From NCBI RefSeq assembly GCF_006345805.1, contig NC_043011.1, forward strand, positions 11,222,001 to 11,286,000: a DNA stretch of 64,000 nucleotides, given 5' to 3'. Shown here one piece after another: positions 11,371-52,764 of the stretch. The notes beneath the pieces were generated by a model that made no database searches, was not told the DNA's origin, and saw only the letters and a program-made list of their open reading frames with translations. How positions within the stretch are numbered: position 1 is the first letter of the stretch; every line of letters starts with the position of its first letter. The translations under genes were made by a program, and so were the position numbers. This DNA is from Octopus sinensis. Lineage: Eukaryota.

Positions 11371-11865
11371 CTGTCATCAACCGATGCTGGTGTGTTTACG
11401 TCCCTGTCACTTAGTTGTTCGGCAAAAGAGACCGATAGAATAAGTACTAGGCTTACACAGAATAAGTCCTGGGGTCGATTTGCTCGACTAAAGGCAGTGC
11501 TTCAGCATGGCCACAATCAAATGACTGAAACAAATAAAAGAGTAAAGAGTATATGTCTGGTCCATCTGAGTATTCGCTTTTTATCTACTGTAATTACAAT
11601 AACCCTTACTTTTCTGAACCTGCTAAAAGTGCTGACAGTTTGCAAGTTATAAGAATAAGTCACATACTAAACAATATGGATTTTATTCCTACATTCCAGA
11701 GTTAAATTTACTCTGAAACTTTCTCAACTTAAAATTGATAATCAGGGCCTTGTTGATGAAATCATAAAAGAAAACATTTTTTTTGTCGGAATTTAAAAGG
11801 AGAAAAGTCAACTGAATTTATATCAGTTTTTGTAATATTCATCTTATCCATCTCAACCCCCACAG

Positions 11866-12020
11866 GTGTATGAAGTATTTGACCAGAGTGGAAATAGAAT
11901 GGCAGTTAAGTGCATTACTTTTGGTGACGCTCACGCAGTTACCATAGGGAGCTACAAAAAGGAGGTGATCCTTCTGAAGCAGTTGCAGTACAGTGACCGA
12001 ATCATCAAACTCTATGATTA
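11866..12020 (+). CDS. TTK: TTK inner copy exon E6, subdomains II-IV
   Basis: VYEVFDQSGNRMAVKCITFGDAHAVTIGSYKKEVILLKQLQYSDRIIKLYD matches Mps1 (SY..E..L..L..SD.II.LYD). Confidence 0.9.
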
Positions 12021-15783: not shown

Positions 15784-15840
<57 letters not shown>

Positions 15841-15971: not shown

Positions 15972-16017
<46 letters not shown>

Positions 16018-16675: not shown

Positions 16676-16726
16676 AGCTTCTACAGGACTAGAACTGTTT
16701 CATTCAAGAGAAATCTTCAGGAAGCT
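16676..16726 (-). ncRNA. Hammerhead motif H1 (variant CTGAAGA, loop II TCTT)
   Basis: Differs from 14275 only at N7 and loop II; all helices kept. Confidence 0.75.
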
Positions 16727-17656: not shown

Positions 17657-17708
<52 letters not shown>

Positions 17709-18356
17709 CTTACACCCATACACAAGTATACAAGCATATATACATATATATATACACAAATACACATATATACACACAAATACACATATGCATACATAAA
17801 TATATACATATACATGCATACACACACACACATATATATATATATACATATTTAAAAAAGTCTACAAGTCCATACATATACGCACATACATATACATACA
17901 CACATATATACACATATATATATATACCTATATATATATATATTGTTATATTTCGGAATGGTCATATTGCCAGTTTAGCCAATAAAAACACACGCACTAT
18001 ATATTTGGTGTTATTTTGCTTCAGTGATACTTATTTTTTACATTAATCTTAATCTTATTTCGGCCAAAGTTCTTTCGTCACACTCCTGTGACCGCATCAG
18101 TGGTCCTTTGTTTTTTTCTCACTTATTTGTGTCTCTCCTTACTAACCGTCAGCCATTTTGTATTTCTATTGCATGTCTTCATTTGCGCATGCTTATATCT
18201 CTATGTGCATCTATGTTTATTTAGTGTGTGGCTAAACTGGCAATATGACCATTCCGAAATATAACAATATCTGTTTCAACACACGACTTCACATAAAAAA
18301 TGTTGCACAACAAATATATATATATATATATCTATATATATTTATTATATAGAAGG

Positions 18357-18407
18357 AGCTTCTACAGGACTAGAACTGTTTCATTCAAGAGAAATCTTCA
18401 GGAAGCT
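18357..18407 (-). ncRNA. Hammerhead motif H1
   Basis: Identical to 16676-16726. Confidence 0.75.
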
Positions 18408-18787
18408 AGTTAACAAGAATTGTATTGGCATTTATACATTTAGGCAGGTGGGGGACTTTTTTGGGGGTAGGCATAGCACAAAATATCATACTTGGGGGAG
18501 TGGTCAAGGAGTCAGTGTTAAATTAGATGGAAGAATAAATAAAAAAAAAAAAAAATAAAAAATAAAAAAAAAAAAATAAAATAAAAAAACCTATATATAA
18601 AGAAAAAAAAACCCTATATATAAAAAAAGGGGGGATAGAGTTTTAGGTAAATAAGGAGATTCTCACTCATACCTATGCACACATGTATACATACATACAC
18701 ACACATGCAAACATATATACACATACATACACACATACATACACACACATATATATACATATATATACACTTACACATACACATGCT

Positions 18788-18826
<39 letters not shown>

Positions 18827-18852
18827 CATACATACATACACACACATGTATG

Positions 18853-18891
<39 letters not shown>

Positions 18892-19301
18892 AGCATGTGT
18901 ATGTGTAAGTGTATATATATGTATATATATGTGTGTGTATGTATGTGTGTATGTATGTGTATATATGTTTGCATGTGTGTGTATGTATGTATACATGTGT
19001 GCATAGGTATAAGTGAGAATCTCCTTATTTACCTAAAACTCTATCCCCCCTTTTTTTATATATAGGTTTTTTTTTGTTTTTTTTTTATATATAGGTTTTT
19101 TATTTTATTTTTTTATTTATTTTTTTTTAATTTTTTTATTTTTTTATTTTTTTATTTATTCTTCTATCTAATTTAACACTGACTCCTTGACCACTCCCCC
19201 AAGTATGATATTTTGTGCTATGCCTACCCCCAAAAAAGTCCCCCACCAACACCCCGTTAAACCTGCCTAAATGTATAAATGCCAATACAATCTTGTTAAC
19301 T

Positions 19302-19352
19302 AGCTTCCTGAAGATTTCTCTTGAATGAAACAGTTCTAGTCCTGTAGAAGCT
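19302..19352 (+). ncRNA. Hammerhead motif H1 (sense to the TTK pre-mRNA)
   Basis: AGCTTCCTGAAGATTTCTCTTGAATGAAACAGTTCTAGTCCTGTAGAAGCT. Confidence 0.75.
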
Positions 19353-19459
19353 CCTTCTATATAATAAATTAATTTTACTCTGCTATGTATTGAGTACCTT
19401 ATTACTGTGGTTAACCCCGAATCAACCCGGGACCTACATATATCTATATATATATATAT

Positions 19460-20613
19460 TGTTGTGGTTCGGCCGGCACAGTATTTCTGACCTACTTTGT
19501 TGAGAGGTGAGACGGAAGGTCTGGAATAAAAAGCTACAGCCCTTTGTTTACTGGAAGAGTATGGCTTTTGGAGGGACCTTTGGCCTTGTGCCGGTCGATT
19601 AGGGGTCAGAGAGATGTGAGGGCCGAGGAAGATAGAGTAAGGAAGAATCCAGTGACAGTGAAGAAGAGGAAGAAGAAAGTAGTGAGAAAGACAGAGTAAG
19701 GGATCTGAGAGCTGTCATGAGAGAATGACAGTGACAGCGTCGATATAGATAGGCAGATAGGGCTGAGAGCAGATAGAGAGGATATTAGTGTGCAGAGACA
19801 GATTGAGGGTAGTGATAGAGGACAGTCGGTATTCGGTCGTCAAAGCGAGCAGTCGGTTTTTGGGAGTCGAGGCGAGCGGTTGGAATTTAAGCAGTCGGCG
19901 GTCTTGGAGTATTGGGACAGAGAGAGATATATACAGAGGAATAGGCGGCGGTGGAGATGGGGTACAATATGAGGCGTTGGCTAATGTAAGGTACGTGAAT
20001 TGTGCATTGATATGTGAAGAAAAAGAAGGACAAGGAATCGAAATGAACAGTGAAAAGAAATGAGACAGTAAAAAGGAATTTAAAGAACAATGTGAATTGT
20101 GTAAGGACATTGTGTACAGTGTTGTGATTTGAACATTGTATAATGAACAATGAACTGTTAGGCCTGTAATGTCCTTTGAACTGTATATGACTTGTTGATG
20201 TGTTTTGAAATAGAACTGTGTCTTCGGATGTGTACCTTTGAAATGCTGATGTATTGACCTTGATGTGTTGTTACCGGACGGTTATATTGTTACTTGCATG
20301 TTTAAATGCTTTGATCTGTGGTATACCTGTATGATGTATTGAGTTGTCACGTGCATGTCTCTTTTAAATGTATCTGAAATGTATTTGATGTTGTAACAAT
20401 TGATTGTCATAAACTAGTGTTAAATGTAAGCCAGTTGTGCCTTGCCTCTTTGTGTCTCTCTCGGTTGCCTCTGTATCTCCTCTGTGCTGCTGTTGTGTTG
20501 TTGTATCTCTCTCTCCTCTCCAAGTTTCCGTAGCGAAAATATTCGCTGCATCGAACGGGCCTTGTGTGAGGGATTCCGTAACAGTTCGAATCGGAGGTCC
20601 CCACCTCGTAACA
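19460..20613 (-). mobile_element. Probable solo LTR (Gypsy-like ends)
   Basis: TGTTACG...ACAACA on - strand, ATAT on both sides, 1154 bp, non-coding. Confidence 0.55.
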
Positions 20614-20972
20614 ATATATATACACATACATACACCCATACACAAGTATACAAGCATATATACATATACATATACATATATATATATATACACACAAATA
20701 CACATACATACATATACACAAATACACATACGCATACATAAATATACATATGTATATACACATGCATACACATACACACACATCTATATATACATAAATA
20801 CATACAAGCATATATACATATACATATACACATATACATACACGCATACGCAAATAATAAATATATATACATGCAAATACCTATACTTACACATACACAT
20901 ACGCGTACATATACATATACATATATATATATATATATAATATATACATACATACATACACACACATGTATG

Positions 20973-21011
<39 letters not shown>

Positions 21012-21424
21012 AGCATGTGTATGTGTAAGTGTATATATATGTATATATATGTGTGTGTATGTATGTGTGTATGTATGTGTATATATGTTTGCATGTGTGT
21101 GTATGTATGTATACATGTGTGCATAGGTATAAGTGAGAATCTCCTTATTTACCTAAAACTCTATCCCCCCTTTTTTTATATATAGGTTTTTTTTTGTTTT
21201 TTTTTTATATATAGGTTTTTTTTTTTATTTTTTTTTATTTATTTTTTTTTAATTTTTTTATTTTTTTATTTTTTTATTTATTCTTCTATCTAATTTAACA
21301 CTGACTCCTTGACCACTCCCCCAAGTATGATATTTTGTGCTATGCCTACCCCCAAAAAAGTCCCCCACCAACACCCCGTTAAACCTGCCTAAATGTATAA
21401 ATGCCAATACAATTCTTGTTAACT

Positions 21425-21475
21425 AGCTTCCTGAAGATTTCTCTTGAATGAAACAGTTCTAGTCCTGTAGAAGCT
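21425..21475 (+). ncRNA. Hammerhead motif H1
   Basis: Identical to 19302-19352. Confidence 0.75.
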
Positions 21476-21585
21476 CCTTCTATATAATAAATTAATTTTA
21501 CTCTGCTATGTATTGAGTACCTTATTTACTGTGGTTAACCCCGAATCAACCCGGGACCTACATATATCTATATATATATATATAT

Positions 21586-22742
21586 TGTTGTGGTTCGGCC
21601 GGCACAGTATTTCTTGACCTACTTTGTTGAGAGGTGAGACGGAAGGTCTGGAATAAAAAGCTACAGCCCTTTGTTTACTGGAAGAGTAATGGCTTTTGGA
21701 GGGACCTTTGGCCTTGTGCCGGTCGATTAGGGGTCAGAGAGATGTGAGGGCCGAGGAAGATAGAGTAAGGAAGAATCCAGTGACAGTGAAGAAGAGGAAG
21801 AAGAAAGTAGTGAGAAAGACAGAGTAAGGGATCTGAGAGCTGTCATGAGAGAATGACAGTGACAGCGTCGATATAGATAGGCAGATAGGGCTGAGAGCAG
21901 ATAGAGAGGATATTAGTGTGCAGAGACAGATTGAGGGTAGTGATAGAGGACAGTCGGTATTCGGTCGTCAAAGCGAGCAGTCGGTTTTTGGGAGTCGAGG
22001 CGAGCGGTTGGAATTTAAGCAGTCGGCGGTCTTGGAGTATTGGGACAGAGAGAGATATATACAGAGGAATAGGCGGCGGTGGAGATGGGGTACAATATGA
22101 GGCGTTGGCTAATGTAAGGTACGTGAATTGTGCATTGATATGTGAAGAAAAAGAAGGACAAGGAATCGAAATGAACAGTGAAAAGAAATGAGACAGTAAA
22201 AAGGAATTTAAAGAACAATGTGAATTGTGTAAGGACATTGTGTACAGTGTTGTGATTTGAACATTGTATAATGAACAATGAACTGTTAGGCCTGTAATGT
22301 CCTTTGAACTGTATATGACTTGTTGATGTGTTTTGAAATAGAACTGTGTCTTCGGATGTGTACCTTTGAAATGCTGATGTATTGACCTTGATGTGTTGTT
22401 ACCGGACGGTTATATTGTTACTTGCATGTTTAAATGCTTTGATCTGTGGTATACCTGTATGATGTATTGAGTTGTCACGTGCATGTCCTCTTTTAAATGT
22501 ATCTGAAATGTATTTGATGTTGTAACAATTGATTGTCATAAACTAGTGTTAAATGTAAGCCAGTTGTGCCTTGCCTCTTTGTGTCTCTCTCGGTTGCCTC
22601 TGTATCTCCTCTGTGCTGCTGTTGTGTTGTTGTATCTCTCTCTCCTCTCCAAGTTTCCGTAGCGAAAATATTCGCTGCATCGAACGGGCCTTGTGTGAGG
22701 GATTCCGTAACAGTTCGAATCGGAGGTCCCCACCTCGTAACA
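21586..22742 (-). mobile_element. Second copy of the solo LTR, part of a ~2.12 kb tandem duplication
   Basis: Near-identical to 19460-20613, including both flanks. Confidence 0.55.
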
Positions 22743-22782
22743 ATATATATACACATACATACACCCATACACAAGTATACAA

Positions 22783-22823
<41 letters not shown>

Positions 22824-23041
22824 AATACACATACATACATATACACAAATACACATACGCATACATAAATATACATATGTATATACACATGCATACACAT
22901 ACACACACATCTATATATACATAAATACATACAAGCATATATACATATACATATACACATATACATACACGCATACGCAAATAATAAATATATATACATG
23001 CAAATACCTATACTTACACATACACATACGCGTACATATAC

Positions 23042-23073
<32 letters not shown>

Positions 23074-23440
23074 ATAAAAACACACATGCGTACATATACA
23101 CCTATACATACATACATATACACACATAGATACATGCTCATAAGCACATACATATATATATATATATATCCATATTCCTATTCATATTCGTATCCATACC
23201 CGTATTCATATCCATATATATATAAAAATATATACATATATAAATATACATACATATATACATACATATATTCATATTTACATTCATACACATATATATA
23301 TGTACATATACACATACATAAACATATACACATGCATATACCTACACATAAATATATATTCGTGTACACACACATACATTAATACATACACACACATATA
23401 TACACACATATGCACATATACACACATACATATACACACA

Positions 23441-23825
23441 TCATCATCGTTTAGCGTCCGTTTTCCATGCTAGCATGGGTTGGACGGTTCTACTGGGGTC
23501 TGGGAAGCCAGAAGGCTTCATCAGGCCCAGTCAAATCTGGCAGTGTTTCTACGGCTGGATGCCCTTCCTAACGCCAACCACTCCGAGAGTGTAGTGGGTG
23601 CTTTTTACGTGCCACCCGCACAGGTGCCAGACAGAGCTGGCAAACGGCCACGAACGGATGGTGCTTTTTATGTGCCACCGGCACGGGGGCCAGGCGAGGC
23701 TGGCAATGGACACGAAACGGGGCGGTGCTGGCAACGGTTGCGAAACGGAAGGTTCTCTTACATGCCACCGGCACTGGTAACACATCTGCAATTTCCATTG
23801 ATCGATTTCCATTGATCGATTCCGA
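23441..23825 (-). mobile_element. RTE 3'UTR-derived repeat
   Basis: Near-identical to the reverse complement of 60090-60479; absent from the mirror arm at about 26990. Confidence 0.8.
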
Positions 23826-24059
23826 TACATACACATACATACATATATATCTATATATACATACATATATACATACACATACACACACATATATATACAC
23901 ATACAAAAACATGTACACATATACTCATACACACGTATACACACCTTCACATACACATGTACATACACAGTTGCACACGCTCACATACAAATACATATAT
24001 GCACTCGTATACATATATGTGCACATATAAACATGCCCACATCCATATATATGTATATA

Positions 24060-25609
24060 GTCTTAGGAGAGAGGGTAATTGGGGGTGCTGAAGGAACGGT
24101 GGGGTGGGGGGTTTTTGTGGGTGGGGTGTCACAATCGGGTTGCCGAGTGGGTCTGTAGTTTTTGTAGTTTGCATAAATTTTGTGCATACAGTTTGGGGAG
24201 TGTTCCGAGATATTGTTCAGGAGAGGGCCTTTGGCGAACAAGATCTCTAGGCTCTCAGAAATGCAAAGGTCACAGCAGGTATGGCCTCCTGTGTAAGAAC
24301 GCGCCCTCTGTAGTAGTCTCCACTTGATCTTGAAGGGGATGGAGTTCCTTTTAAGGTGCCAGATATGGGCGGCGAGAGTAGTCTGGTTAGATTTGTCAGG
24401 TCGCCGGAACGAATGTGTGTGGGCGTACCAGCGAGTCTTAAAACTATTTGACGTCATTCCGATGTACGATTTTCTTTTATCATCGGGGCCTGATCGTACA
24501 TCGCATATGTAGACGAGATTCTTCTGTAGGCAGTTGTTGTTGAGGGGGCAAGTAGTCTTATCAGGGCAGTTGCAATTGCTGTCGGATGTTGGATGGGCTT
24601 CGGAAAAAGTAGATTTATTAAGTTTTTTTACGTTATTGTTGGCTAGGTTCCTGGCTAGATTGGGTGTGGTGGAGTAGGAGAGTCTAATGGTGTTCTTATT
24701 AAGGATTGTATAGTACTTATGTTGGGTGGGGAAGTGTTTTTGTAGGAGAGTGAAGAAAATTTTAGCTACAGGTGTTGAAACTTCACGGTTGAAGGGGGGG
24801 TGTACCAGCTAATGTGTCTTCCCCTATTTTTCCTGGGTTGGCGTCGGGCTATGCTAATGTAGGTGATCTTATCTTTAAAGCCACTGCGGGCCAGGGCCTC
24901 GTAATAGGGGGCTGCGGCATTAAAGATATCTTTGGTGGCAGAAAGGCTAGATATTCCAATGGAGACACTTTTCACTAGGTTGTCTAATATATTTTTGGGG
25001 TGGTTAGAATTAATGTCTATGTATCTGAGGGATTCATTTGGTTTATGGTACGGGTAATAAAGGGAGGTTTATAAATCGAGGGTAACGTCAAGGAAGTTAG
25101 CTTTGGTTAAGTCCAAATCTAAGGTAATCCTAAGGCCTAAGTTTTTAAAAAAAAGTGTAAAGGTTTTTCCGGAACCCATCCGTGGTCCTGGGGTTTATTT
25201 TGTAGAGGGCAAAAAGGCCATCATCGCGGTAGAGACCACCGGAGAGGCCTGTGAATAGGGTCTTCAGCCTATGGAGGAAGAAAAGGCTCACAAGGTCACT
25301 TATTTCAGCCGAGTCACTAGCATCCATGCTGATGTCGAAGGGGGTCACGGATTTTTTGTTGATCCAGTGGGATCTGTCATGGTAAAGAAAGGTCTTACGT
25401 GCATGGAGGATCACATCTTGCTCGGCTTCGGTGATGGTGGAGAACATCCTAGTGAAGTTAATCGTGTCAATCAGCAGGCTCTCCGATATGGAGGTGTAAT
25501 AATCCTCGATATCTAATTGTAGGAATCGGGTGTTGCTCTTGTCAGGTAAATCCTGGAACCAAGTTATTGCCTCGGAGGTCCTATTCCAGAGTGGAAGGGG
25601 TGAAGCTTT
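24060..25609 (-). mobile_element. Penelope-like element (RT plus GIY-YIG endonuclease), decayed, left arm
   Basis: RT LQLDIEDYY...GLYRDDGL; EN ..SNSFKTRWYAHTHSF...CCDLCISE. Confidence 0.85.
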
Positions 25610-26660
25610 GGTCCGACTGATTAACCCAACCAAGTCTGACATCGGATCTGTCAGCAAGAAGATCCTGGACAGGATTTTACCTAAAATAGGTGAAGCTTCA
25701 CCCCTTCCACTCTGGAATAGGACCTCCGAGGCAATAACTTGGTTCCGGGATTTACCTGACAAGAGCAACACCCGATTCCTACAATTAGATATCAAGGATT
25801 ATTACGCCACCATATCGGAGAGCCTGCTGATTGACGCGATTAACTTCGCTAGGATGTTCTCCACCATCACCGAAGCCGAGCAAAATGTGATCCTCCATGC
25901 ACGTCTCCATTAGAATATCTAGCCTTTCTGCCACCAAAGATATCTTTAATGCCGCAGCCCCCTATTACAACGAGGCCCTGGCCCGCAGTGGCTTTAAAGA
26001 TAAGATCACCTACATTAACATAGCCCCACGCCAACCCAGGAAAAATAGGCGAAGACACATTAGCTGGTACAACCCCCCTTCAACCGTGAAGTTTCAACAC
26101 CTGTAGCTAAAATTTTCTTCACTCTCCTACAAAAACACTTCCCCACCCAACATAAGTACTATACAATCCTTAATAAGAACACCATTAGACTCTCCTCCAC
26201 CACAACCAATCTAGCCAGGAACCTAGCCAACAATAACGTAAAAAAATTTAATAAATCTACTTTTTCCGAAGCCCATCCAACATCCGACAGCAATTGCAAC
26301 TGCCCTGATAAGACTACTTGCCCCCTCAACAACAACTGCCTACAGAAGGATCTCGTCTACATATGCGATGTACGATCAGGCCCCGATGATAAAAGAAAAT
26401 CGTACATTGGAATGATGTCAAATAGTTTTAAGACTCGCTGGTACGCCCACACACATTCGTTCCGGCGACCTGATAAATCTAACCAGAATACTCTCGCCGC
26501 CCATATCTGGCACCTTAAAAGGAACTCCATCCCCTTCAAGATCAAGTGGAGACTACTACAGAGGGCGCGTTCTTACACAGGAGGCCATACCTGCTGTGAC
26601 CTTTGCATTTCTGAGAGCCTAGAGATCTTGTTCGCCAAAGGCCCTCTCCTCAACAAGATC
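25610..26660 (+). mobile_element. Same Penelope-like element, right arm, internal deletion at about 25912
   Basis: Inverted copy of 24230-25609; VYICDVR...YIG GIY-YIG motif near 26355-26410. Confidence 0.85.
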
Positions 26661-27233
26661 TGTGTATGTACATGTGTATGTGAAGGCGTGTATATGTGTA
26701 CATGTTTTTGTATGTGTATATATATGTGTGTGTATATGTATGTATGTATATATGTATGTATATATAGATATATATGTATGTATGTGTATGTATGTATATA
26801 TAGGTATATATGTATGTATGTGTATGTATGTATATATAGATATATATGTATGTATGTATGTGTATGTATGTATATATATATATATGTATGTATGTGTATG
26901 TATGTATATATATATATATATGTATGTATGTGTATGTATGTATATATATATATATGTATGTATGTGTATGTATGTATATATATATGTGTGTATATGTATG
27001 TGTGTATATGTGCATATGTGTGTATATATGTGTGTGTATGTATTAATGTATGTGTGTGTGTACGCGAATATATATTTATGTGTAGGTATATGCATGTGTA
27101 TATGTTTATGTATGTGTATATGTACATATATATATATGTGTATGAATGTAAATATGAATATATGTATGTATATATGTATGTATATTTATATATGTATATA
27201 TTTTTATATATATATGGATATGAATAGGGATAT

Positions 27234-27274
<41 letters not shown>

Positions 27275-27415
27275 ATATAGAGGGCATTATACATACATGC
27301 CAGAAGGCATTATACATACATGCCAAACGCTAAGAGGGACAATTAGTCATTTCTACCAAAATATTACTAATCCCACCGAATGCAATTTTTCAAAGTAAGA
27401 CATTTAAAAAAATAT

Positions 27416-27463
27416 AGACCTGTATCACAGTGATTTCATACTTACGTACTCATCAGCAGGCCT
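27416..27463 (-). ncRNA. Type I hammerhead motif, family H2
   Basis: AGGCCTG-CTGATGA-GTAC GTAA GTAT-GAAA-TCAC T GTGA-TA-CAGGTCT; 7-bp stem I, GNRA loop II. Confidence 0.75.
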
Positions 27464-28020
27464 GAATGTATTATAAATAAACAACGACCCTGCCCCGCTT
27501 AAGCCGATCACTAACTGCTCGACATCAACGAAGCACATGGGTGAGTTTACATATATTACATCCGGATAAATGGCAAACTTTTACGAATTGCATTTCGGGA
27601 GAGGAAAAGTTTTTTCGGAATAAAAATTTAGCAATTAAGGACAACTACTTAATGAGGAAAACTTAACAAGAAATTGTCAGGTAGATAGCGTAAAAACCTC
27701 ATAAGAGAAAAAATTTCGAAAATAATTATTTCTTATTGAACATATTAATTTATATATAGAGGGCATTATACATACATGCCAGAAGGCATTATACATACAT
27801 ATTGGTAGAAATGACTAATTGTCCCTCTTAGCATTTGGCATGTATGTATAATGCCTTCTGGCATGTATGTATAATGCCCTCTATATATAAATTAATATGT
27901 TCAATAAGAAATAATTATTTTCGAAATTTTTTCGAAACTCACCCATGTGCTTCGTTGATGTTGATCAGTTAGCTGATCGGCTTAAGCGGGGCAGGGTCGT
28001 TGTTTATTTATAATACATTC

Positions 28021-28068
28021 AGGCCTGCTGATGATTACGTAAGTATGAAATCACTGTGATACAGGTCT
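28021..28068 (+). ncRNA. Hammerhead motif H2, mirror copy (G10.1 to T)
   Basis: AGGCCTGCTGATGATTACGTAAGTATGAAATCACTGTGATACAGGTCT. Confidence 0.65.
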
Positions 28069-28208
28069 ATATTTTTAAATGTCTTACTTTGAAAAATTGC
28101 ATTCGGTGGGATTAGTAATATTTTTGGTAGAAATGACTGATTGTCCCTCTTAGCGTTTGGCATGTATGTATAATGCCTTCTGGCATGTATTTATAATGCC
28201 CTCTATAT

Positions 28209-28247
<39 letters not shown>

Positions 28248-28911
28248 GCTTATGTGCGTGTATCTATGTGTGTGTATGTATGTATAGGTGTATATGTACG
28301 CATGTGTGTTTTTATGTATATATATATATATATATGTATATATATGTATATATATGTATATGTATATGTACGCGTATGTGTATGTGTAAGTACAGGTATT
28401 TGCATGTATATATATTTATTATTTGTGTATGCGTGTATGTATATGTGTATATGTATATGTATGTATGCTTGTATGTATTTATCTATATATAGATGCGTGT
28501 GTGTGTGTATGTGTATGCATGTGTATATACAAACGTATATTTATGTATGCGTATATGTATTTGTCTATATGTATGTATATATGTGTATTTGTGTATATGT
28601 ATATATATATATATATATAATATATATTATATGCCTGTATACTTGTGTATGGGTGTATGTATGTGTATATATATATATATATATATAGGTATATATATGT
28701 GTATATATGTGTGTATGTATATGTATGTGTGTATATGTATGGACTTGTAGACTTTTTTATATGTGTATATATATATATATGTGTGTGTGTATGCATGTAT
28801 ATGTATATATTTATGTATGCGTATGTGTATTTGTCTATATATATATATGTATATATGTGTGTTTGTGTATATATATGTATATATGCTTGTATACTTGTGT
28901 ATGGGTGTAGG

Positions 28912-28958
<47 letters not shown>

Positions 28959-29101
28959 GTATATATGTATATGTATACGTATGTGTGTATATGTATGGAC
29001 TTGTAGACTTTTTTTTATATTTATATATGTATAATATGTGTGTGTGTATGTTGTAGATATGCGTATGTGTATTTGTATGTGCATGTGCTTATATATATAT
29101 A

Positions 29102-29177
<76 letters not shown>

Positions 29178-30175
29178 TAATGTATATGTATGTGTATGTA
29201 TATATGTATATATTGGTGTATGGGTGTATGTGTATGTGTGTGTAGGTATATACGTATATGTATATATATACATATATATATATGGACTTGTAGATTTTTG
29301 TATGTGTATATATGTATGTGTATGTGTGTAGGTATGTATATGCATGTATGCATTTATGTGCACATGTATGCATGCATGTGTGCATATATGTATTTATAAG
29401 CATATGGATGCGTATATATGCGTATGTATGTTTATATGCACATATGTTTTTATATGAGCATATGCGTTTATATATGCGGGCAGATATTTATGTGTGTTTA
29501 TGTGTACTGAAGTACGTTTATATATGTGTGTTTGTGTGTACATAGTTATGTATACGTTTATGTGAAAGTGGGTACATTTATGTATGTATGCATATGAGTA
29601 CTTGTGTGTGTATATGTATGTGTATATGTATATATATATATATATATATATGTGCATGTAGAGAGAGATATATACATATGTATAAGTGGATGAGGAGGTA
29701 ATGAGTGAGAGAACATGTGTGTTTGTGTATGTGTATGAGTGTGAGTGTGTGTGAGTGTTTGCATTTGTATCCGTGGGTAAAGAGATAGAAAGGAAGGGAG
29801 AGGGGAGCGGTAGATGGATTCCATTAGGCCTGTTGGAACCCTGGGGAATTCTAGGAACTTTTGGCGTTTGTCTACTCTAGCGCCACTAAATGTGTGTCGG
29901 CGGGTAGGTAGGTCATAGATTATACCTTTTATGATCTGGAAGACGGTCAAGGGAAAATAAAAATAAAAATAAAATAAGGGAGGAAGATGAGGAGAGAAGA
30001 AAAAAAAAATATATATGTGTGTGTGTGCATGGGTGTGTATATTTATATATATATGTGTAGATATAGGTGTGCGTGTGTTTGCGTGTTTGCATGTATGTGT
30101 ATTTGTATATATATGTGTATGTATATATATGTATATGTATGTATGTGTATATGTATATATATATATATATATATA

Positions 30176-31663
30176 TACCACCATCCACACCGCCCTTGCC
30201 AGAGCAATTTCTGTGGACCGTGTATCTGCTCTCCCTCCCTGAACCCGCCCTGTAGTCTCCCGCCTCCCTTTTCCCCTCACTACCCCACGACCCTACCTCT
30301 CCAACGCACCATTCTTCGAGCTTTCCGTCATCTCCAGTCCGACCTGTCCACTTCACACCTCTTCCCTAACCGACCCCTCCCCTCTTTCAAACGAGCGCAT
30401 AACCTTCGAGACCTTTTGGTCTGTAGCTCCTTCCCTGACCCTACCTCCCAACCTGGCTCGCTCCCCTGCTCCTGCCCACGTTGCCGCACTTGCCCTTACC
30501 TCTCCAACACTACCCTCCTCACTGGCACCCATCATCGACCCTATCGCATTATCAACTCCTTCACCTGCACCTCCAGCAATATTATCTATTGTGTCTCTTG
30601 CTCTCTCTGCCATTCCCTGTACATCGGACAAACGGGACGCCGCTTGGCTGACCGGTTCGCGGAACACCTTCGTGACATCCGCCTTGCGAATGACACACTG
30701 GTCTCACGCCATTTCCGCTCCACCGGTCACTCCTTGCAACACCTGTCTGTGTTCGGTTTGTCCTTACACAGAGGCCATCCGGATTCCCGTTTGCGCCGTG
30801 AACAGGAATTAATCTTCTCTCTTCGTTCTTATACGCCATTTGGTCTCAACTCTCCTCCCCCTCTCATCTAACCCCTAACCCCCCTCTCCCCCCTCCTCAT
30901 CTAACCTCCCCTCGACCCCTACTTCTTTTCAGTCCTTCATCCTTTCACCCCTACTCCTCTTCCCTTCTTCCCTCTTTCTCCCTCCCTCCTTCTTCCCTCT
31001 TCCCCTTCCCTCTTTCTCTCTGCTCCCTCCTCCCCTTCTCTCTCTCCCCCTCTCCTCCTCTCCCCTCCTTCCTTCTCCCCCCTTCTCTCCCCTCCTCTTC
31101 TCCTCCTTCCTTCTCCCCTTCCCCCTCCTCTTCTCCCCTCTTCTCTTTCTTTCTCCCCCCCTCCCCGTTCTCCCCCCTTACCTCCCCATCTTCCCTCATC
31201 TCCTCTCTCTGCACTACACCATACGACTTTACACATCACATCATATATACATACACACGTCCAGACCTCTCATACGCACTAATACTCACTCATACACACA
31301 CACACACTCTTCTCATATACACACACACACACACTCTTATGTTGGAGCGAGGTCATTTAACCCTATTATCTCCCCTAATTTCGCTCTTGCGTCTCACGTT
31401 TGATTTTTGACTTCTGGCCAAAATCAGATCGCCATGTTGATTCGCTAGCCTCTTCACACATTTTTTTTCTCTCCTTCTTTCTGTGTTTTTTCTCTGTGTA
31501 TCTTTCTGTTGAAGAGCGTAGGCTCGAAACATTAAAGACTTGTTTTATTTATATTTCCTGAGCGCCATACTAATACAATTGTTTGTTTGTATTCCACCTG
31601 CCTTCATCTTTTGTTTATTTCCGTAAACCTGCCTTTGTCTTTTGTCTATTTTCATAAAGCTTC

Positions 31664-31666
<3 letters not shown>
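30176..31666 (+). mobile_element. 5'-truncated Penelope-like element of a second family: GIY-YIG ORF end, polypyrimidine tract and 3' region
   Basis: IIYCVSC..C..LYIGQTGRRLADRFAEH...RREQELIFSLRSYTPFGLN, stop at 30871; bounded by (TA)n. Confidence 0.85.
31501..31538 (+). ncRNA. Degenerate minimal hammerhead (H4) downstream of the PLE ORF
   Basis: TCTTT-CTGTTGA-A-GAGC GTAG GCTC-GAAAC-ATT-AAAGA; two core deviations. Confidence 0.45.
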
Positions 31667-31721
<55 letters not shown>

Positions 31722-31723
<2 letters not shown>

Positions 31724-32135
31724 TCATCATCATCATCATCATCATTTAACGTCCGCTTTCCATGCTAGCATGGATTGGACGGTTCAACTGGGGTCTGGGG
31801 AGCCCGAAAGCTGCACCAGTCCAGTCAGATCTGGCAGTGTTTCTACAGCTGGATGCCCTTCCTAACGCCAACCACTCTGAGAGTGTAGTGGGTGATTTTA
31901 TGTGCCACCGACACAGGTGCCAGACGAGGCTGGCAAACGGCCACGCTCGGATGGTGTTTTTTATGTGCCACCGACACAGGTGCCAGACGAGGCTGGCAGA
32001 CGGCCACGCTCGGATGGTGTTTTTATGTGCCACCGACACAGGTGCCAGATGAGGCTGGCAAACGGCCACGATCGGATGGTGTTTGTTACGTGCCCACAGC
32101 ACGGAGGCCAGTCGATGCGGTACTGGCTACGGCCA
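31722..32135 (-). mobile_element. RTE 3'UTR-derived repeat with ~3-4 internal ~60-bp units
   Basis: (CAT)n end, tandem GTGCCACCGACACAGGTGCCAG units. Confidence 0.75.
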
Positions 32136-32533
32136 CGTTATATATATATATATATGTGCTAGTGTATTTATATGTATGTATATGTGTGTCTGTATGTATA
32201 TACATGGGCATATGTATATGTATGGATATTCGCATGTCTATGTATGTGGGTTTGTATGTATATTTATTTTATATGTTCTTTTATGTATACATATCTACTT
32301 CTTCCCTCCACTTAATAACAACAACAACAAACTGACTAAAAGCAATAGTCTTCTAATTTACCTAAAACTCTATTCAATTATTCTATTTATTCATTTATTT
32401 ACTTTATCACTGATTCTTTTGACCACTCCCCTAAGAAAGACAGTTTGTGCCCTGCTTACCCAAAAAATGTCCCCCACCACCACCCCATTACATCTGCCTA
32501 AATGTATAAATGCCAGATCTTATTTTGACAGCA

Positions 32534-32584
32534 AGCTTCCTGATGATTTCATTTGAATGAAACAGTTCTAGTCCTGTAGAAGCT
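32534..32584 (+). ncRNA. Hammerhead motif H1, right end of the giant palindrome
   Basis: Exact reverse complement of 14275-14325; predicted cleavage after 32578. Confidence 0.75.
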
Positions 32585-32689
32585 CCTTCTATAAAATAAA
32601 TTAATTTACTGTGCTATGTATTGAGTACCTTATTTACTGTGGTTAACCCCGACTCAACCTGAGACCTACATATATATATATATATATAT

Positions 32690-33286
32690 ATATGCTGTGC
32701 GCGAAAAGACCATGAAGGACAAGTGAGTCCAGCCCACTTATGCATGCCTTCCTCCCTTGGACACACAAAGACCTGTTGAGGCAAGCGAAGTCGATATTGA
32801 ACCTCATCTGACGATGGGCACCTATGCCTGTTGGGGCAAGTGGAATCGAAATTGAACCAATCCTATGACTGGCACCCGGCAGATGCCAGGACCCCTGGAC
32901 TGGAGATACGTAAAAAGCACTATCTGAATCGTGGCCGATGCCAGCGCCGCCTCGACTGGCGTCCGTGTCGGTGGCACGTAAAAAGCACCATCCGAATCGT
33001 GGCCGAAGCCAGTGCCGCCCCGACTGGCTTCCGTGCAGGTGGCACGTAAAATGCACCAATCCGACCGTGGCCGATGCCAGCCTCGCCTGGCACCAGTGCA
33101 GGTAGCACGTAAAAAGCACCCACTACACTCACGGAGTGGTTGGCGTTAGGAAGGGCATCCAGCTGTAGAAACATTGCCAGATAAGACCGGAGCCTGGTGC
33201 AGCCTTCTGGCTTCCCAGATCCCCGGTCGAACCGTCCAACCCATGCTAGCATGGAGAACGGACGTTAAACGATGATGATGATGATG

Positions 33287-33288
<2 letters not shown>
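32690..33288 (+). mobile_element. RTE-type 3'UTR repeat (long subfamily); similar copy at 62926-63480 (-)
   Basis: Ends ...GGACGTTAAACGATGATGATG. Confidence 0.7.
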
Positions 33289-33317
<29 letters not shown>

Positions 33318-33382
33318 AAAGAATATATTTATATTTCAAAAGTATATTTATTAATTAATTATTTTATTATTGTAGTTATCTT

Positions 33383-33486
33383 TAACCTGATGAGTGGCTA
33401 TATTTATATTGAAGTGATTTTCATACTACTACTAATATTTTTACTATAATCATTTCTTAAATATAGCCACGAAACGCGTGTCGTTA
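33383..33486 (+). ncRNA. Type I hammerhead motif with long stem II, family H3
   Basis: TAAC-CTGATGA-GTGGCTATATTTA...TAAATATAGCCAC-GAAAC GCGT GTC-GTTA; canonical core, G10.1-C11.1, GUC triplet. Confidence 0.85.
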
Positions 33487-33736
33487 TTCTACCAAATATT
33501 TACGTTTTATTTATTATTTTGCACTTTACTTTATCATCGTTATATTTTTTATTTTATATTTAATCTTTCTATAATATGTAATTTTCTAGATGTTGTAATT
33601 TAATTTTTCATTATTGAATTGATAAAAGGGTTTTTTTTTCTAATTTATATATATATATATATTATATTTTGTGAAATTTTATTTAGTATTTCTAAATTGA
33701 ATTTTTCCCTGTAAGTTTGGAATAATATTCCCTCAT

Positions 33737-33832
<96 letters not shown>

Positions 33833-34534
33833 AATCCATTATTAGCAGTGGAAGCAATGTTGGTTCTGAATAACTTTCGGTATGTTTTACTTAACATTGA
33901 TATACTATTGAAAACCACAAAACTGCAATATTAATCTCAAGTAAGCTTCTGTTATTGAGCTGTAGTGCTAAATAGCACAGAAGTATATCTGAAGCAGATG
34001 TAAAGCATTCACCAGCTGTGGTAGAATTGCAAAGTCATGATTTTTGTGTCTTCACACATCATCAGTAGCAAATATCTATTACCAACTACTTGCTTAAACA
34101 AGTTTCATTTCTACTCATATATATTTCTTTACTGCCCACAAGGGGCTAACGTTTCTACCAGCTCACCGCCTTTCACTTCTACTGATATAGTAAAACAGTG
34201 ATGACAAATCTGGTGTTACAAAAATTTGTTATTGACAGTAGAAACAATATTTGTTCATTGTCTTATTCTGTATGTCTTGCTTAATGCGAATATGTTATTG
34301 AAAGCCACAAAACTGCAATATTTGTTTTTTCCCAATTAAGTAGCTGATGCTGGTGTCTTAGTAATTACTATGACACAGAACATATCAGAACTGCCCAGCT
34401 TACCAGAAATACTCTGCAAAACTGACAACTCATCACTTGAAGAGCCATAGTAAACCAACGATTACTGTTTCTGTTTATTCTGTATACGACATTCCTTTGA
34501 GCCAGTGTAATGTTGTCACATATCTGTTTTCTAG

Positions 34535-34701
34535 TGAACTCGACTATCAGAAGAACTGTTTGAATTTGGTGTTGGAGTTTGGCGACATTGACCTTGCAAG
34601 TTTGTTCCGTAGCCAATATAAGACAAACAAAATACCCCAAATGATGGTCATGTGCTACTGGACCCAGATGCTGGAAGCTGTTCTGGTACTCCATAAAGAA
34701 G
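34535..34701 (+). CDS. TTK: TTK inner copy exon E7, hinge and subdomains V-VIa
   Basis: LVLEFGDIDL...YWTQMLEAVLVLHKE (Mps1 MECGNIDL...YWKNMLEAV). Confidence 0.9.
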
Positions 34702-34885
34702 GTATTGTATCATACAGGTATTTTTCTAGTGGTGTCATAAAGAAGTTATGTTGTACGGGTGTTTTCCTTAAGATTACAGTTGCAATTTTATGGAATTCCA
34801 AATGCTTCAAAGCCTGAAAATGTAGAGATATTTCAACATCATATGTTATATAGTACTGTTGTTTGCCATAATATAGTTGTGTTCA

Positions 34886-39791: not shown

Positions 39792-39996
39792 TTAATTGTA
39801 ATTATATGCAAGGCATCAAGCTGTGGTCCATGTAGCCATGGAGAGTAGGCATTAGATTACCTCAGAATGTTACATGCAACAAATGAGTGTTATCCCTCTA
39901 ATTTATGTTTTGTACCCTTGAGATATATTTATGATGTTACACACATGCACGCACACATCTACACTTTATATATATCTTACTCTGTTTCTTGTGCAG

Positions 39997-40078
39997 TGCT
40001 GTCTGTGCAGAGATCCCAAAGAAAGACCGTCTATTGAAGAAATTCTGCAGCATCCATATTTGAGTGAAATGACAATAG
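39997..40078 (+). CDS. TTK: TTK inner copy exon E10, subdomain XI
   Basis: CCLCRDPKERPSIEEILQHPYL. Confidence 0.95.
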
Positions 40079-48890: not shown

Positions 48891-49204
48891 TATGTCTGGT
48901 CCATCTGAGTATTCGCTCTTTATCTACTGTAATTACAATAACCCTTACTTTTCTGAACCTGCTAAAAGTGCTGACAGTTTGCAAGTTATTAGAATAAGTC
49001 ACATACTAAACAATATGGATTTTATTCCTACATTCCAGAGCTAAATTTACTCTGAAACTTTCTCAACTTAAAATTGATAATCAGGGCCTTGTTGATGAAA
49101 TCATAAAAGAAAACATTTTTTTTGTCGGAATTTAAAAGGAGAAAAGTCAACTGAATTTATATCAGTTTTTGTAATATTCATCTTATCCATCTCAACCCCC
49201 ACAG

Positions 49205-49359
49205 GTGTATGAAGTATTTGACCAGAGTGGAAATAGAATGGCAGTTAAGTGCATTACTTTTGGTGACGCTCACGCAGTTACCATAGGGAGCTACAAAAAG
49301 GAGGTGATTCTTCTGAAGCAGTTGCAGTACAGTGACCGAATCATCAAACTCTATGATTA
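49205..49359 (+). CDS. TTK: TTK outer copy exon E6
   Basis: One synonymous change relative to 11866-12020. Confidence 0.9.
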
Positions 49360-49953: not shown

Positions 49954-50003
<50 letters not shown>

Positions 50004-50072
50004 AAAGAATATATTTATATTTTAAAAGTATATTTATTAATTAATTAATTATTTTATTATTGTAGTTATCTT

Positions 50073-50176
50073 TAACCTGATGAGTGGCTATATTTATATT
50101 GAAGTGATTTTAATACTACTACTAATATTTTTACTATAATCATTTCTTAAATATAGCCACGAAACACGTGTCGTTA
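50073..50176 (+). ncRNA. Hammerhead motif H3, paralogue of 33383-33486
   Basis: Same fold; stem III region ACACGTGT is a perfect palindrome; predicted cleavage after C50172. Confidence 0.85.
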
Positions 50177-50440
50177 TTCTACCAAATATTTACGTTTTAT
50201 TTATTATTTTGCACTTTACTTTATCATCGTTATATTTTTTATTTTATATTTAATCTTTCTATAATATGTAATTTTCTAGATGGTGTAATTTAATTTTTCA
50301 TTATTGAATTGATAAAAGGTGGTTTTTTCTAATTTATATATATATATATATTATATTTTGTGAAATTTGATTTAGTATTTCTAAATTGAATTTTTCCCTG
50401 TACGTTTGGAATTAGATTCCCTCATGTTATTATTATTATC

Positions 50441-52127: not shown

Positions 52128-52357
52128 TATGTTTGTTTTTTTTTTTGTTTTTTTCCAATTAAGTAGTTGATGCTGGTGTCTTAGTAATTACTATGACACA
52201 GAACATATCAGAACTGCCCAGCTTACCAGAAATACTCTGCAAAACTGACAACTCATCACTTGAAGAGCCATAGTAAATCAACGATTACTGTTTCTGTTTA
52301 TTCTGTATACGACATTCCTTTGAGCCAGTGTAATGTTGTCACATATCTGTTTTCTAG

Positions 52358-52524
52358 TGAACTTGACTATCAGAAGAACTGTTTGAATTTGGTATTGGAA
52401 TGTGGCAACATTGACCTTGCAAGTTTGTTCCGTAGCCAATACAAGACAGAAAAAATACCCCAAATGATGGTCATGTGCTACTGGACCCAGATGCTGGAAG
52501 CTGTTCTGGTACTCCATAAAGAAG
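52358..52524 (+). CDS. TTK: TTK outer copy exon E7
   Basis: LVLECGNIDL, canonical Mps1 hinge. Confidence 0.9.
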
Positions 52525-52764
52525 GTATTGTATCATACAGGTATTTTTCTAGTGGTGTCATAAAGAAGTTATGTTGTACAGGTGTTTTCCTTAAGATTAC
52601 AGTTGCAATTTTATGGAATTACAAATGCTTTAAAGCCTGAAAATGTAGAGATATTACAGCATCATATGTTATATAGTACTGTTGTTTGCCATAATATAGT
52701 TGTGTTCAGTAATGTAATCATGAAAAAGAGTTAGCATAGTAAAATAATATAGTAAAATAACATA

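What the first reader, a model, noticed from the sequence alone, without database searches (positions are those of the whole stretch)
33383..33486. Canonical sense-strand hammerhead (H3) in the same intron of both kinase copies
Perfect core, G10.1-C11.1, a 13-bp perfect stem II with a further AT-rich extension, a GUC site, and stem I TAAC/GTTA extendable by GTAG/CTAC. It is intact at 33383 and 50073, in the E6-E7 intron, on the transcribed strand, so it predates the duplication. The one change in stem III (GCGT vs ACGT) keeps pairing. Inference: it could cut the TTK pre-mRNA co-transcriptionally and affect splicing or expression, as proposed for intronic hammerheads in other animals.
Basis: partly seen in the sequence, partly recalled or inferred. 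Interest (0 to 1): 0.72.

Follow-up and report, generated by a model that had tools for sequence, protein, structure and literature searches.

The report
Solo hammerhead ribozyme in kinase intron
A complete self-cleaving hammerhead RNA motif does sit on the transcribed strand in the same intron of both copies of a TTK/Mps1 kinase gene (probably from an octopus), but it looks like a leftover of a retroelement insertion, and nothing here shows that it regulates the gene.

Summary
At 33383-33486 and 50073-50176 (+ strand) there is a full hammerhead: core CUGAUGA...GAAA, G10.1-C11.1, a perfect 13-bp helix II, A15.1-U16.1 and a GUC site that would be cut after 33482 / 50172. Random 64-kb sequences give 0.02 such motifs. 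Both copies lie in the intron between two TTK/Mps1 kinase-domain exons, on the sense strand.

"Canonical" is only partly right. The topology is type I, helix I is 4 AU-rich bp, and helix III is 2 bp plus a tetraloop. The 15.1-16.1 stretch is an 8-nt palindrome, and helix II is a 77-nt hairpin. This is the architecture of hammerheads carried by Penelope-like elements (PLEs) and animal retrozymes, which cleave poorly as single copies.

The motif lies in an 18% GC non-coding unit that starts at a (TA)n microsatellite, the preferred PLE target. The window also holds a PLE endonuclease fragment with its own degenerate hammerhead, and a second hammerhead family.

The two gene copies differ by 2.25% overall and by 2/121 in the ribozyme, so being intact in both is the neutral expectation.

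Verdict: a real ribozyme motif, most likely a solo retroelement relic. Regulation of TTK is unsupported. It is a new member of a known kind, of low to moderate interest.

The parts
33372..33375 (+). Copy A, outer part of helix I, 5' strand (GUAG). Pairs with CUAC 33489-33492 across a 7x2 internal loop.
33383..33386 (+). Copy A, helix I 5' strand (UAAC, positions 2.4-2.1).
33387..33393 (+). Copy A, catalytic core C3-A9 (CUGAUGA).
33394..33470 (+). Copy A, helix II hairpin (77 nt): 13 perfect bp starting with G10.1-C11.1, a 4x1 internal loop, 9 more bp, and a 28-nt apical loop.
33471..33474 (+). Copy A, core G12 A13 A14 A15.1 (GAAA).
33474..33481 (+). Copy A, helix III, ACGCGUGU: 2 bp (A-U, C-G) closing the tetraloop GCGU. 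The stretch is self-complementary (6 Watson-Crick and 2 G-U pairs) and able to form an intermolecular helix III.
33482..33482 (+). Copy A, C17. Predicted scissile bond between 33482 and 33483.
33483..33492 (+). Copy A, helix I 3' strand: GUUA 33483-33486, UU, then CUAC 33489-33492.
50062..50182 (+). Copy B, the whole motif at +16690: UAAC 50073-50076, CUGAUGA 50077-50083, helix II 50084-50160, GAAA 50161-50164, helix III ACACGUGU 50164-50171 (a perfect 8-nt palindrome), C17 50172, GUUA 50173-50176, outer GUAG 50062-50065 / CUAC 50179-50182.
33315..33750 (+). Copy A, the AT-rich (18% GC) non-coding unit that carries the hammerhead. It is bracketed by (TA)n at 33287-33314 and 33751-33825, with a short inner (TA)8 at 33646-33661.
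50004..50439 (+). Copy B, the same unit (96% identical). (TA)22 lies upstream at 49956-49999. A ~600-bp insertion found only in copy B follows at 50440-51033.
11863..12018 (+). Copy A, TTK kinase-domain exon upstream of the hammerhead intron (...VKCITFGD...RIIKLYD).
34497..34709 (+). Copy A, tblastn match that contains the TTK exon downstream of the intron (...LVLEFGDIDL...HKEGIV). The true 5' exon boundary lies inside this span.
49202..49357 (+). Copy B, TTK exon upstream of the hammerhead intron.
52320..52532 (+). Copy B, tblastn match that contains the TTK exon downstream of the intron.

Best explanation
H3 is a genuine hammerhead ribozyme motif with type I topology (helix I open). Its build matches the hammerheads carried by Penelope-like retroelements (PLEs) and animal non-LTR retrozymes: a short AU-rich helix I, an enlarged helix II, and a tiny helix III embedded in a palindrome.

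It lies in a ~430-bp, 18% GC, non-coding unit that starts at a (TA)n microsatellite, inside an intron of a TTK/Mps1 kinase gene. The unit was there before the segment was duplicated. The copies now differ by about 2%.

Inferred steps:
- The unit is a 5'-truncated or solo terminal piece of such a retroelement that landed in the (TA)n tract.
- As part of the sense pre-mRNA, the motif could cut after C33482 / C50172, leaving a 2',3'-cyclic phosphate and a 5'-OH.
- As a lone monomer it probably cuts slowly or not at all. Helix III has 2 bp. The length of helix II rules out the usual loop I-loop II contacts. A competing fold that sequesters part of the core is about 6 kcal/mol more stable.
- In their native setting such motifs work as dimers in tandem transcripts, a partner this locus lacks within the intron.
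- The likely consequence for TTK expression is therefore small or none.
For: - Motif and statistics: (3 motifs against 0.02 expected; random helix II never longer than 5 bp).
- Type I alignment to RF00163, with the core and helix III matched.
[quoted passage not shown] For most metazoan type I hammerheads it describes a helix III of 1-2 bp capped by a small palindromic loop. It found no detectable cleavage by a single copy of the tested S. mansoni minimal motif. [quoted passage not shown]
- Dimer potential: co-folding two copies pairs the 8-nt 15.1-16.1 palindromes. The hammerhead monomer fold is -21.7 kcal/mol against an MFE of -27.9 / -27.7.
- Insertion signature: (TA)n runs up to the unit on the 5' side in both copies and on the 3' side in copy A. 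PLEs prefer (TA)n targets and carry their hammerhead near the 3' end (PMC8557442).
- PLEs are present in this genome and in this very intron: a GIY-YIG endonuclease ORF fragment ends at 30868. A degenerate minimal hammerhead at 31506-31545, about 120 nt before a (TA)n tract, is homologous to hammerheads downstream of PLE endonuclease ORFs in L001 and L004.
- Solo retrozyme monomers are common in introns: 44% of Xenopus tropicalis copies overlap introns (bioRxiv 10.64898/2026.07.22.740005).
- No sign of selection: 2/121 against 2.25% background.
- Absent from the orthologous Lottia intron.
Against: - No homology was found between the H3 unit and any PLE sequence available here: the window's PLE fragment and loci L001, L002 and L004.
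- No reverse transcriptase or endonuclease ORF adjoins the unit in copy B.
- Its genome-wide copy number could not be measured because no cephalopod genome could be searched by DNA. Repeat status is therefore inferred from context.
- A helix II of 13+9 bp is much longer than the 6-8 bp described for PLE hammerheads.
- The 342-nt unit does not fold into a rod as retrozyme RNAs do (z = -1.19).
- A 2-bp helix III with a tetraloop is reported as compatible with efficient monomeric cleavage in invertebrate retrozymes (PMC7229834), so low activity is an inference, not a result.
Confidence: 0.62

Rival explanations
1. Co-opted regulatory ribozyme. The sense-strand hammerhead cleaves nascent TTK pre-mRNA inside the intron and so tunes splicing or transcript yield, as proposed for the HH9/HH10 intronic hammerheads of amniotes.
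For: - Intact core and sense orientation in both copies.
- The motif is only ~1.1 kb (copy A) or ~2.2 kb (copy B) upstream of the next exon.
- Intronic sense hammerheads with a proposed role in mRNA biogenesis exist in amniotes (cited in PMC7229834).
Against: - Retention of both copies is the neutral expectation.
- There is no conservation evidence; the motif is absent in Lottia.
- The TE-like context, with (TA)n at the unit's edges and PLE debris nearby.
- The architecture predicts weak monomer activity.
- From my own knowledge of published minigene work (Dye et al. 2006; Fong et al. 2009, not re-read here): ribozyme cuts inside introns often leave splicing intact unless cleavage is very fast.
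Confidence: 0.07
2. Member of a still-active, undescribed cephalopod hammerhead repeat family (a non-LTR retrozyme or non-autonomous PLE) whose long helix II is a family trait. The intronic copies would be ordinary dispersed monomers of a family that elsewhere forms tandem arrays and circular RNAs.
For: - Low GC, a unit of ~330-430 bp, a type I hammerhead, and a helix III of 2 bp plus tetraloop, as in invertebrate retrozymes.
- Two other hammerhead families occur within 6 kb in the same window.
Against: - Only the two paralogous copies are in the window, with no tandem arrangement.
- No rod-like fold.
- No relatives in the searchable collections.
Confidence: 0.25
3. Chance look-alike: an AT-rich hairpin that happens to be flanked by CUGAUGA and GAAA.
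For: - Rfam scores it below the gathering threshold.
- Helices I and III are short and could arise by chance.
Against: - Eleven core bases in the right places, G10.1-C11.1, A15.1-U16.1, C17 and a helix I complement all flank a 13-bp perfect helix.
- 0.02 motifs are expected per window even with a 4-bp helix II, and no random hit exceeded 5 bp.
Confidence: 0.02
4. The 'two kinase copies' are an assembly artefact (uncollapsed haplotypes or a misjoined tandem), so there is really one hammerhead locus.
For: - The copies are 97.75% identical at aligned sites.
- Copy B lacks the large N-terminal exon, which is present at 8741-10212 and, frameshifted, at 3295-4776.
- Differences between the copies are mostly TE-sized indels.
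Against: - The copies differ by a 19-kb block and several 0.4-3 kb insertions, and by amino-acid changes in exons. That fits a real, if recent, segmental duplication equally well.
- It cannot be decided without reads.
Confidence: 0.15

Closest known systems
Hammerheads of Penelope-like elements (minimal hammerheads and the Drosophila virilis-type variant; Cervera & de la Pena 2014, PMC4209133)
   Same: - Type I topology.
- Helix I of 4-5 bp with an ill-defined loop 1.
- Helix II longer than the canonical 4 bp.
- A very small, palindromic helix III suited to dimeric action.
- Location ~120-170 nt before a (TA)n tract, as for the PLE fragment's own hammerhead in this window.
   Different: - Helix II is 13+9 bp, against 6-8 bp.
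[quoted passage not shown]
- No adjoining reverse transcriptase / GIY-YIG ORF or second pLTR.
- No sequence homology to the PLE hammerhead family found in the window, L001 or L004.
Type I hammerheads of animal non-LTR retrozymes (Cervera & de la Pena 2020, PMC7229834; Li et al. 2026 preprint)
   Same: - Low-GC unit of a few hundred bp.
- Helix III of 2 bp capped by a tetraloop.
- Solo monomers are frequent in introns.
- Proposed PLE ancestry.
   Different: - Not in tandem.
- No rod-like fold (z = -1.19).
- Expression as circular RNA is unknown.
- The helix II length rules out the conserved loop 1-loop 2 contacts.
Conserved intronic hammerheads of amniotes (HH9 in RECK, HH10; Rfam RF02275 / RF02277)
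   Same: A sense-strand hammerhead inside an intron of a protein-coding gene, and the same proposed idea of co-transcriptional pre-mRNA cleavage.
   Different: - Those are deeply conserved across species and have canonical helices with tertiary contacts.
- H3 has no conservation evidence and no Rfam match to those models.
- H3 has a TE-like context.
Newt / salamander satellite 2 hammerhead and other dimer-dependent hammerheads (Forster et al. 1988, as cited in PMC4209133)
   Same: A weak helix III capped by a palindromic loop; the double-hammerhead helix III is predicted to form between two copies.
   Different: Those lie in tandem repeats that supply the partner in cis. Here the nearest partner is 16.7 kb away, in the paralogous copy.

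Membership tests
Hammerhead ribozyme (Rfam clan CL00010; type I, RF00163) | Conserved core: C3 U4 G5 A6 N7 G8 A9, G12 A13 A14, A15.1-U16.1, H17 not G | tested here: met
   CUGAUGA 33387-33393, GAAA 33471-33474, U16.1 33481, C17 33482; the same in copy B.
Hammerhead ribozyme (Rfam clan CL00010; type I, RF00163) | Three helices radiating from the core in the right order, with helix I open (type I) | tested here: met
   Helix I 4 bp (+4 bp outer), helix II 13 bp (+9 bp), helix III 2 bp plus tetraloop. The descriptor scan gives 3 hits against 0.02 expected.
Hammerhead ribozyme (Rfam clan CL00010; type I, RF00163) | Score at or above Rfam's gathering threshold | tested here: not met
   No hit at gathering score. 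RF00163 scores 13 bits against 34, E = 7.5 in a 501-nt search, with 73 nt treated as an insert in helix II. The shortfall reflects the unusual helix II, not a core defect.
Hammerhead ribozyme (Rfam clan CL00010; type I, RF00163) | Loop I-loop II tertiary contacts needed for fast cleavage at physiological Mg2+ | tested here: inconclusive
   Helix II continues for 13+9 bp, so its apical loop cannot reach the helix I internal loop in the canonical geometry. Alternative contacts cannot be judged from sequence.
Hammerhead ribozyme (Rfam clan CL00010; type I, RF00163) | Self-cleavage at the H17 site | not testable with these tools
   Needs an in vitro transcription and cleavage assay.
PLE-borne hammerhead (pLTR hammerhead) | Architecture: short helix I, enlarged helix II, minimal palindromic helix III | tested here: met
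   4 bp / 13 bp / 2 bp. ACGCGUGU (6 Watson-Crick plus 2 G-U pairs when self-paired) and ACACGUGU (perfect palindrome), compared with the description in PMC4209133.
PLE-borne hammerhead (pLTR hammerhead) | Lies in a terminal repeat flanking a reverse transcriptase + GIY-YIG ORF | tested here: not met
   No such ORF adjoins the unit in either copy. The only endonuclease fragment (ORF ending at 30868) is in the later 19-kb block of copy A and has its own, unrelated hammerhead at 31506-31545.
PLE-borne hammerhead (pLTR hammerhead) | Insertion into (TA)n microsatellite, with the hammerhead near the element's 3' end | tested here: met
   (TA)n at 33287-33314, 33646-33661, 33751-33825 and 49956-49999. 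The preference is stated in PMC8557442.
PLE-borne hammerhead (pLTR hammerhead) | Sequence homology to a known PLE terminal repeat | tested here: inconclusive
   No similarity to the PLE sequences at hand. No cephalopod repeat library or genome could be searched.
Animal non-LTR retrozyme | Tandem repeats of ~170-400 bp, each with a type I hammerhead | tested here: not met
   A single unit per gene copy, with no tandem copy. Solo monomers are known derivatives.
Animal non-LTR retrozyme | Stable, highly paired RNA monomer expressed as circular RNA | tested here: not met
   The 342-nt unit has z = -1.19 against shuffles. Expression is not testable.
Conserved intronic hammerheads (HH9/HH10 type) | Conservation in the orthologous intron across species | tested here: inconclusive
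   The Lottia gigantea TTK gene has the same exon boundaries, but its intron is 465 bp with no hammerhead core. That comparison is too distant to decide, and octopod orthologues could not be fetched.

The most novel reading that the evidence does not exclude
The octopod TTK/Mps1 gene has domesticated a retroelement hammerhead with an unusual rod-like helix II. It cleaves the pre-mRNA in the intron. Alternatively, if copies A and B lie in one transcription unit, the two motifs pair through their 8-nt palindromic helix III into a double hammerhead that acts in cis. Either way this would give a ribozyme-based control of a spindle-checkpoint kinase.
Probability: 0.05. Interest if true: 0.6.

Novelty: new member of a known kind. 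Interest (0 to 1): 0.27.

Why it matters
If the ribozyme were active and co-opted, it would be an invertebrate example of intronic ribozyme control of an essential mitotic kinase, and it would show that a hammerhead tolerates a 22-bp helix II in vivo. As things stand its value is modest. It documents a complete type I hammerhead, alongside two other hammerhead families and PLE debris, in what is probably an octopod genome, a group for which the papers searched here describe no hammerheads specifically. It also illustrates how (TA)n tracts inside introns collect such elements.

Tried and rejected
- Rfam at gathering score over the whole window: no hammerhead.
- Rfam in E-value mode over 27-32 kb: only microsatellite-driven microRNA-like noise, and the other hammerheads were not reported either.
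- Looking for further copies of the H3 unit in the window with sensitive blastn: only the paralogue.
- Aligning the flanks of H3, H1 and the PLE fragment: no shared sequence except between the PLE fragment and L001.
- Pattern scans for relatives: 0 hits in JGI metagenomes and in IMG/VR with the family-specific pattern. A relaxed pattern gave 10 hits, all chance matches with helix II <=2 bp and helix I <=1 bp; 9 of the 10 were on GC-rich contigs and at least 7 were in one recurring sequence family.
- Fetching the source or orthologous octopod locus by exact-protein look-up of window ORFs: not on record.
- The TTK protein search returned no cephalopod orthologue; the best hit was Lottia at 50% identity.
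- Rod-like retrozyme fold of the whole unit: rejected (z = -1.19).
- Using the intactness of both copies as evidence of selection: rejected.
- A microRNA-like or other Rfam family in the long helix II: nothing at E <= 10.

Full report
**1. Is it there?**

Yes. Reading 33300-33600 and 49990-50290 gives, on the + strand:

UAAC | CUGAUGA | GUGGCUAUAUUUA ... UAAAUAUAGCCAC | GAAA | C GCGU G U | C | GUUA

- The first bases of these elements are at 33383, 33387, 33394, 33458, 33471 and 33475. C17 is at 33482 and GUUA at 33483-33486.
- Copy B is the same at +16690.
- Helix II starts with G10.1-C11.1 and is 13 perfect base pairs. After a 4x1 internal loop it continues with 9 more pairs (GAAGUGAUU/AAUCAUUUC) and a 28-nt apical loop.
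- Helix I is 4 bp (C-G, A-U, A-U, U-A). A 7x2 internal loop separates it from an outer GUAG/CUAC helix.
- Rfam's type I model aligns the core and helix III correctly but scores only 13 bits (gathering score 34), because 73 nt are treated as an insert in helix II. Nothing passes at gathering score.

**2. More than chance?**

- A descriptor requiring the full core, H17, helix I >=4 bp, helix II >=4 bp and helix III >=2 bp finds three motifs in the window: H3 twice, and one at 27456 on the - strand.
- In 300 Markov-1 random sequences of the same length and dinucleotide content it finds 0.02 per sequence, never with a helix II above 5 bp.
- Chance is excluded.

**3. Gene context**

- The coding exons on the + strand are those of a TTK/Mps1 kinase. 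The best hit is Lottia gigantea at 50% identity, with named TTK/MPS1 hits below it.
- tblastn maps two collinear sets of kinase-domain exons:
  - Copy A: 10991, 11863-12018, 34497-34709, 35793-, 38006-, 39976-40068.
  - Copy B: 46479, 49202-49357, 52320-52532, 55911-, 61082-, 62633-62725.
- H3 lies in the intron after the '...RIIKLYD' exon in both copies, on the sense strand. I did not verify the labels E6/E7.
- A LINE in copy B (57.3-59.9 kb) is 86% identical in protein, and 88% in DNA, to a copy on an Octopus vulgaris chromosome. A SINE-like repeat is also shared at 85%. The host is therefore probably an octopod cephalopod.
- The two copies are collinear in blocks with 2.25% substitutions over 6262 aligned nt.
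- Copy A's intron is broken exactly at the (TA)n tract 5' of the H3 unit by a 19-kb block (14260-33287) of satellite and transposon debris.

**4. What kind of hammerhead?**

The core is canonical; the architecture is not.

- The topology is type I.
- Helix III is only A15.1-U16.1 and C15.2-G16.2, closing GCGU (copy A) or ACGU (copy B).
- The whole 15.1-16.1 stretch, ACGCGUGU / ACACGUGU, is self-complementary.
- The single G/A difference is in loop III of the monomer. In a double hammerhead it turns a G-U pair into A-U.
- Co-folding two copies does pair these palindromes. The monomeric hammerhead fold is about 6 kcal/mol less stable than an alternative in which part of the core pairs with the helix I 5' strand.

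What the literature says:

- For most metazoan type I hammerheads they describe a helix III of 1-2 bp capped by a small palindromic loop.
- A single copy of the S. mansoni minimal motif they tested showed no detectable cleavage, and dimeric constructs cleaved weakly.
- H3 fits this group, with an exceptionally long helix II.

**5. Surroundings**

- The motif sits in a 436-bp, 18% GC, ORF-free unit, 33315-33750 (copy B: 50004-50439).
- (TA)n tracts lie at 33287-33314, 33751-33825 and 49956-49999, with a short inner (TA)8 about 165 nt 3' of the cleavage site.
- PLEs prefer (TA)n targets and carry their hammerhead near the 3' end (PMC8557442).

PLEs are demonstrably present in this very intron:

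- The ORF 29978-30868 ends in a CxxC...CxxC linker plus a GIY-YIG endonuclease domain (Pfam E = 0.003, below the cut-off).
- Its homologues on ENA contigs include one directly downstream of an RVT_1 ORF.
- About 640 nt further on lies a degenerate minimal hammerhead at 31506-31545: UCUUU|CUGUUGA|A|GAGC GUAG GCUC|GAAAC|AUU|AAAGA, with an inactivating A6-to-U change.
- That motif is homologous to the minimal hammerheads found 130-285 nt downstream of the endonuclease ORFs in L001 and L004. A (TA)n tract follows 120 nt later.
- A third hammerhead family forms an inverted pair at 27410-27467 (-) and 28015-28070 (+), again next to (TA)n.

All hammerheads in this window therefore share a 'near a 3' end that abuts (TA)n' signature.

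I could not show direct homology between the H3 unit and any PLE. I also could not measure its copy number, because no cephalopod genome is searchable by DNA here. Pattern scans of metagenomes and viral contigs found only chance matches. The unit does not fold as a rod (z = -1.19).

**6. Function**

- The two intact copies carry no information about selection: 2 differences in 121 nt against a 2.25% background (Fisher p = 1).
- Lottia TTK has the same exon boundaries, but its orthologous intron is 465 bp and has no hammerhead core. The motif is not an old feature of the gene, although this comparison is distant.
- Solo retrozyme monomers in introns are commonplace where such elements exist: 44% of Xenopus tropicalis copies overlap introns, even though introns are relatively depleted.
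- From general knowledge, not re-read here: minimal hammerheads without loop-loop contacts need high Mg2+, and ribozyme cuts inside introns often do not disturb splicing unless they are very fast.
- My best account is a retroelement-derived solo hammerhead carried passively in the TTK intron and copied by a recent segmental duplication. It would have weak or no cleavage as a monomer and no demonstrated host role (confidence about 0.6 for the whole chain, and above 0.9 that the motif itself is a true hammerhead).

**7. Novelty and score**

- Intronic and retroelement-borne type I hammerheads are well known in animals.
- The papers searched here mention no hammerhead specifically in cephalopods, and the 13+9-bp helix II is unusual.
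- I rate it a new member of a known kind, interest about 0.27.

Noticed in passing
Sequence: CAGGCCUG|CUGAUGA|GUAC GUAA GUAU|GAAA|UCAC UG UGAU|A|CAGGUCU, with helix I 7 bp, helix II 4 bp with a G10.1-U11.1 wobble, and helix III 4 bp. The + strand copy has G10.1 changed to U. The two sit in an 87% identical inverted repeat (27117-27548 / 27935-28364), each about 140 nt from a (TA)n tract. That arrangement is typical of PLE insertions. Rfam did not report them at E <= 10.
   Followed up: partly
window 29978-30868 (+) and 31506-31545 (+): The 3' end of a Penelope-like element. The ORF ends in a CxxC...CxxC linker plus a GIY-YIG endonuclease domain. A CT-rich low-complexity stretch follows, and then a degenerate minimal hammerhead (CUGUUGA core, A6 to U) that is homologous to minimal hammerheads downstream of PLE endonuclease ORFs in L001:6951-6995 and L004:4642-4690. 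(TA)27 follows at 31667-31720.
   Followed up: yes
window 14260-33287: A 19-kb block present only in copy A splits the hammerhead intron exactly at the (TA)n tract 5' of the H3 unit. It consists of long TG/TA/CA-rich satellite arrays (about 14.7-18.9 kb and 26.6-29.7 kb, in opposite orientations), internal 2-kb duplications (18678-20992 / 20777-23120), SINE-like repeats and the PLE debris. Copy A's intron is about 22.5 kb, against about 3 kb in copy B.
   Followed up: partly
window 3295-4776 and 8741-10212: The large N-terminal TTK exon is itself duplicated (98% identical). The upstream copy is broken into two overlapping frames (3499-4212 and 4185-4757), while 8952-10193 is one open frame. 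Copy B of the kinase exons (from 45987) has no such exon in front of it. 'Copy B' may therefore be a partial duplicate, part of one transcription unit with copy A, or an assembly artefact.
   Followed up: no
window 57276-59868 (+): A LINE in copy B's intron between exons 55911-56111 and 61082-61264. It is absent from copy A. It has a region upstream of the reverse transcriptase that looks like an AP-type endonuclease by eye (Pfam gave no hit) and a reverse transcriptase with a PHD-like finger. Its reading frame is interrupted near 58395-58420. It is 88% identical in DNA to a copy on Octopus vulgaris chromosome OX597814.1 (L003).
   Followed up: partly
window 50440-51033: An insertion found only in copy B, immediately 3' of the H3 unit. 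It contains a 200-bp inverted repeat (50484-50685 / 51022-50821, 95% identical), a foldback or MITE-like element. It replaces the (TA)n tract seen at 33751-33825 in copy A.
   Followed up: no
L005 (Lottia gigantea KB203566.1) 2001-5857: The TTK kinase-domain exon boundaries match between Lottia and the window (aa 24-75 | 77-133 | 132-198 | 198-256 | 253-294 of P0001). Lottia's introns here are only about 0.3-1.6 kb.
   Followed up: yes
window 27000-30200: Dozens of sub-threshold Rfam 'microRNA' matches (mir-297, mir-3149, mir-1277, mir-466 and others). All fall in TG/TA microsatellite arrays and are low-complexity artefacts.
   Followed up: yes
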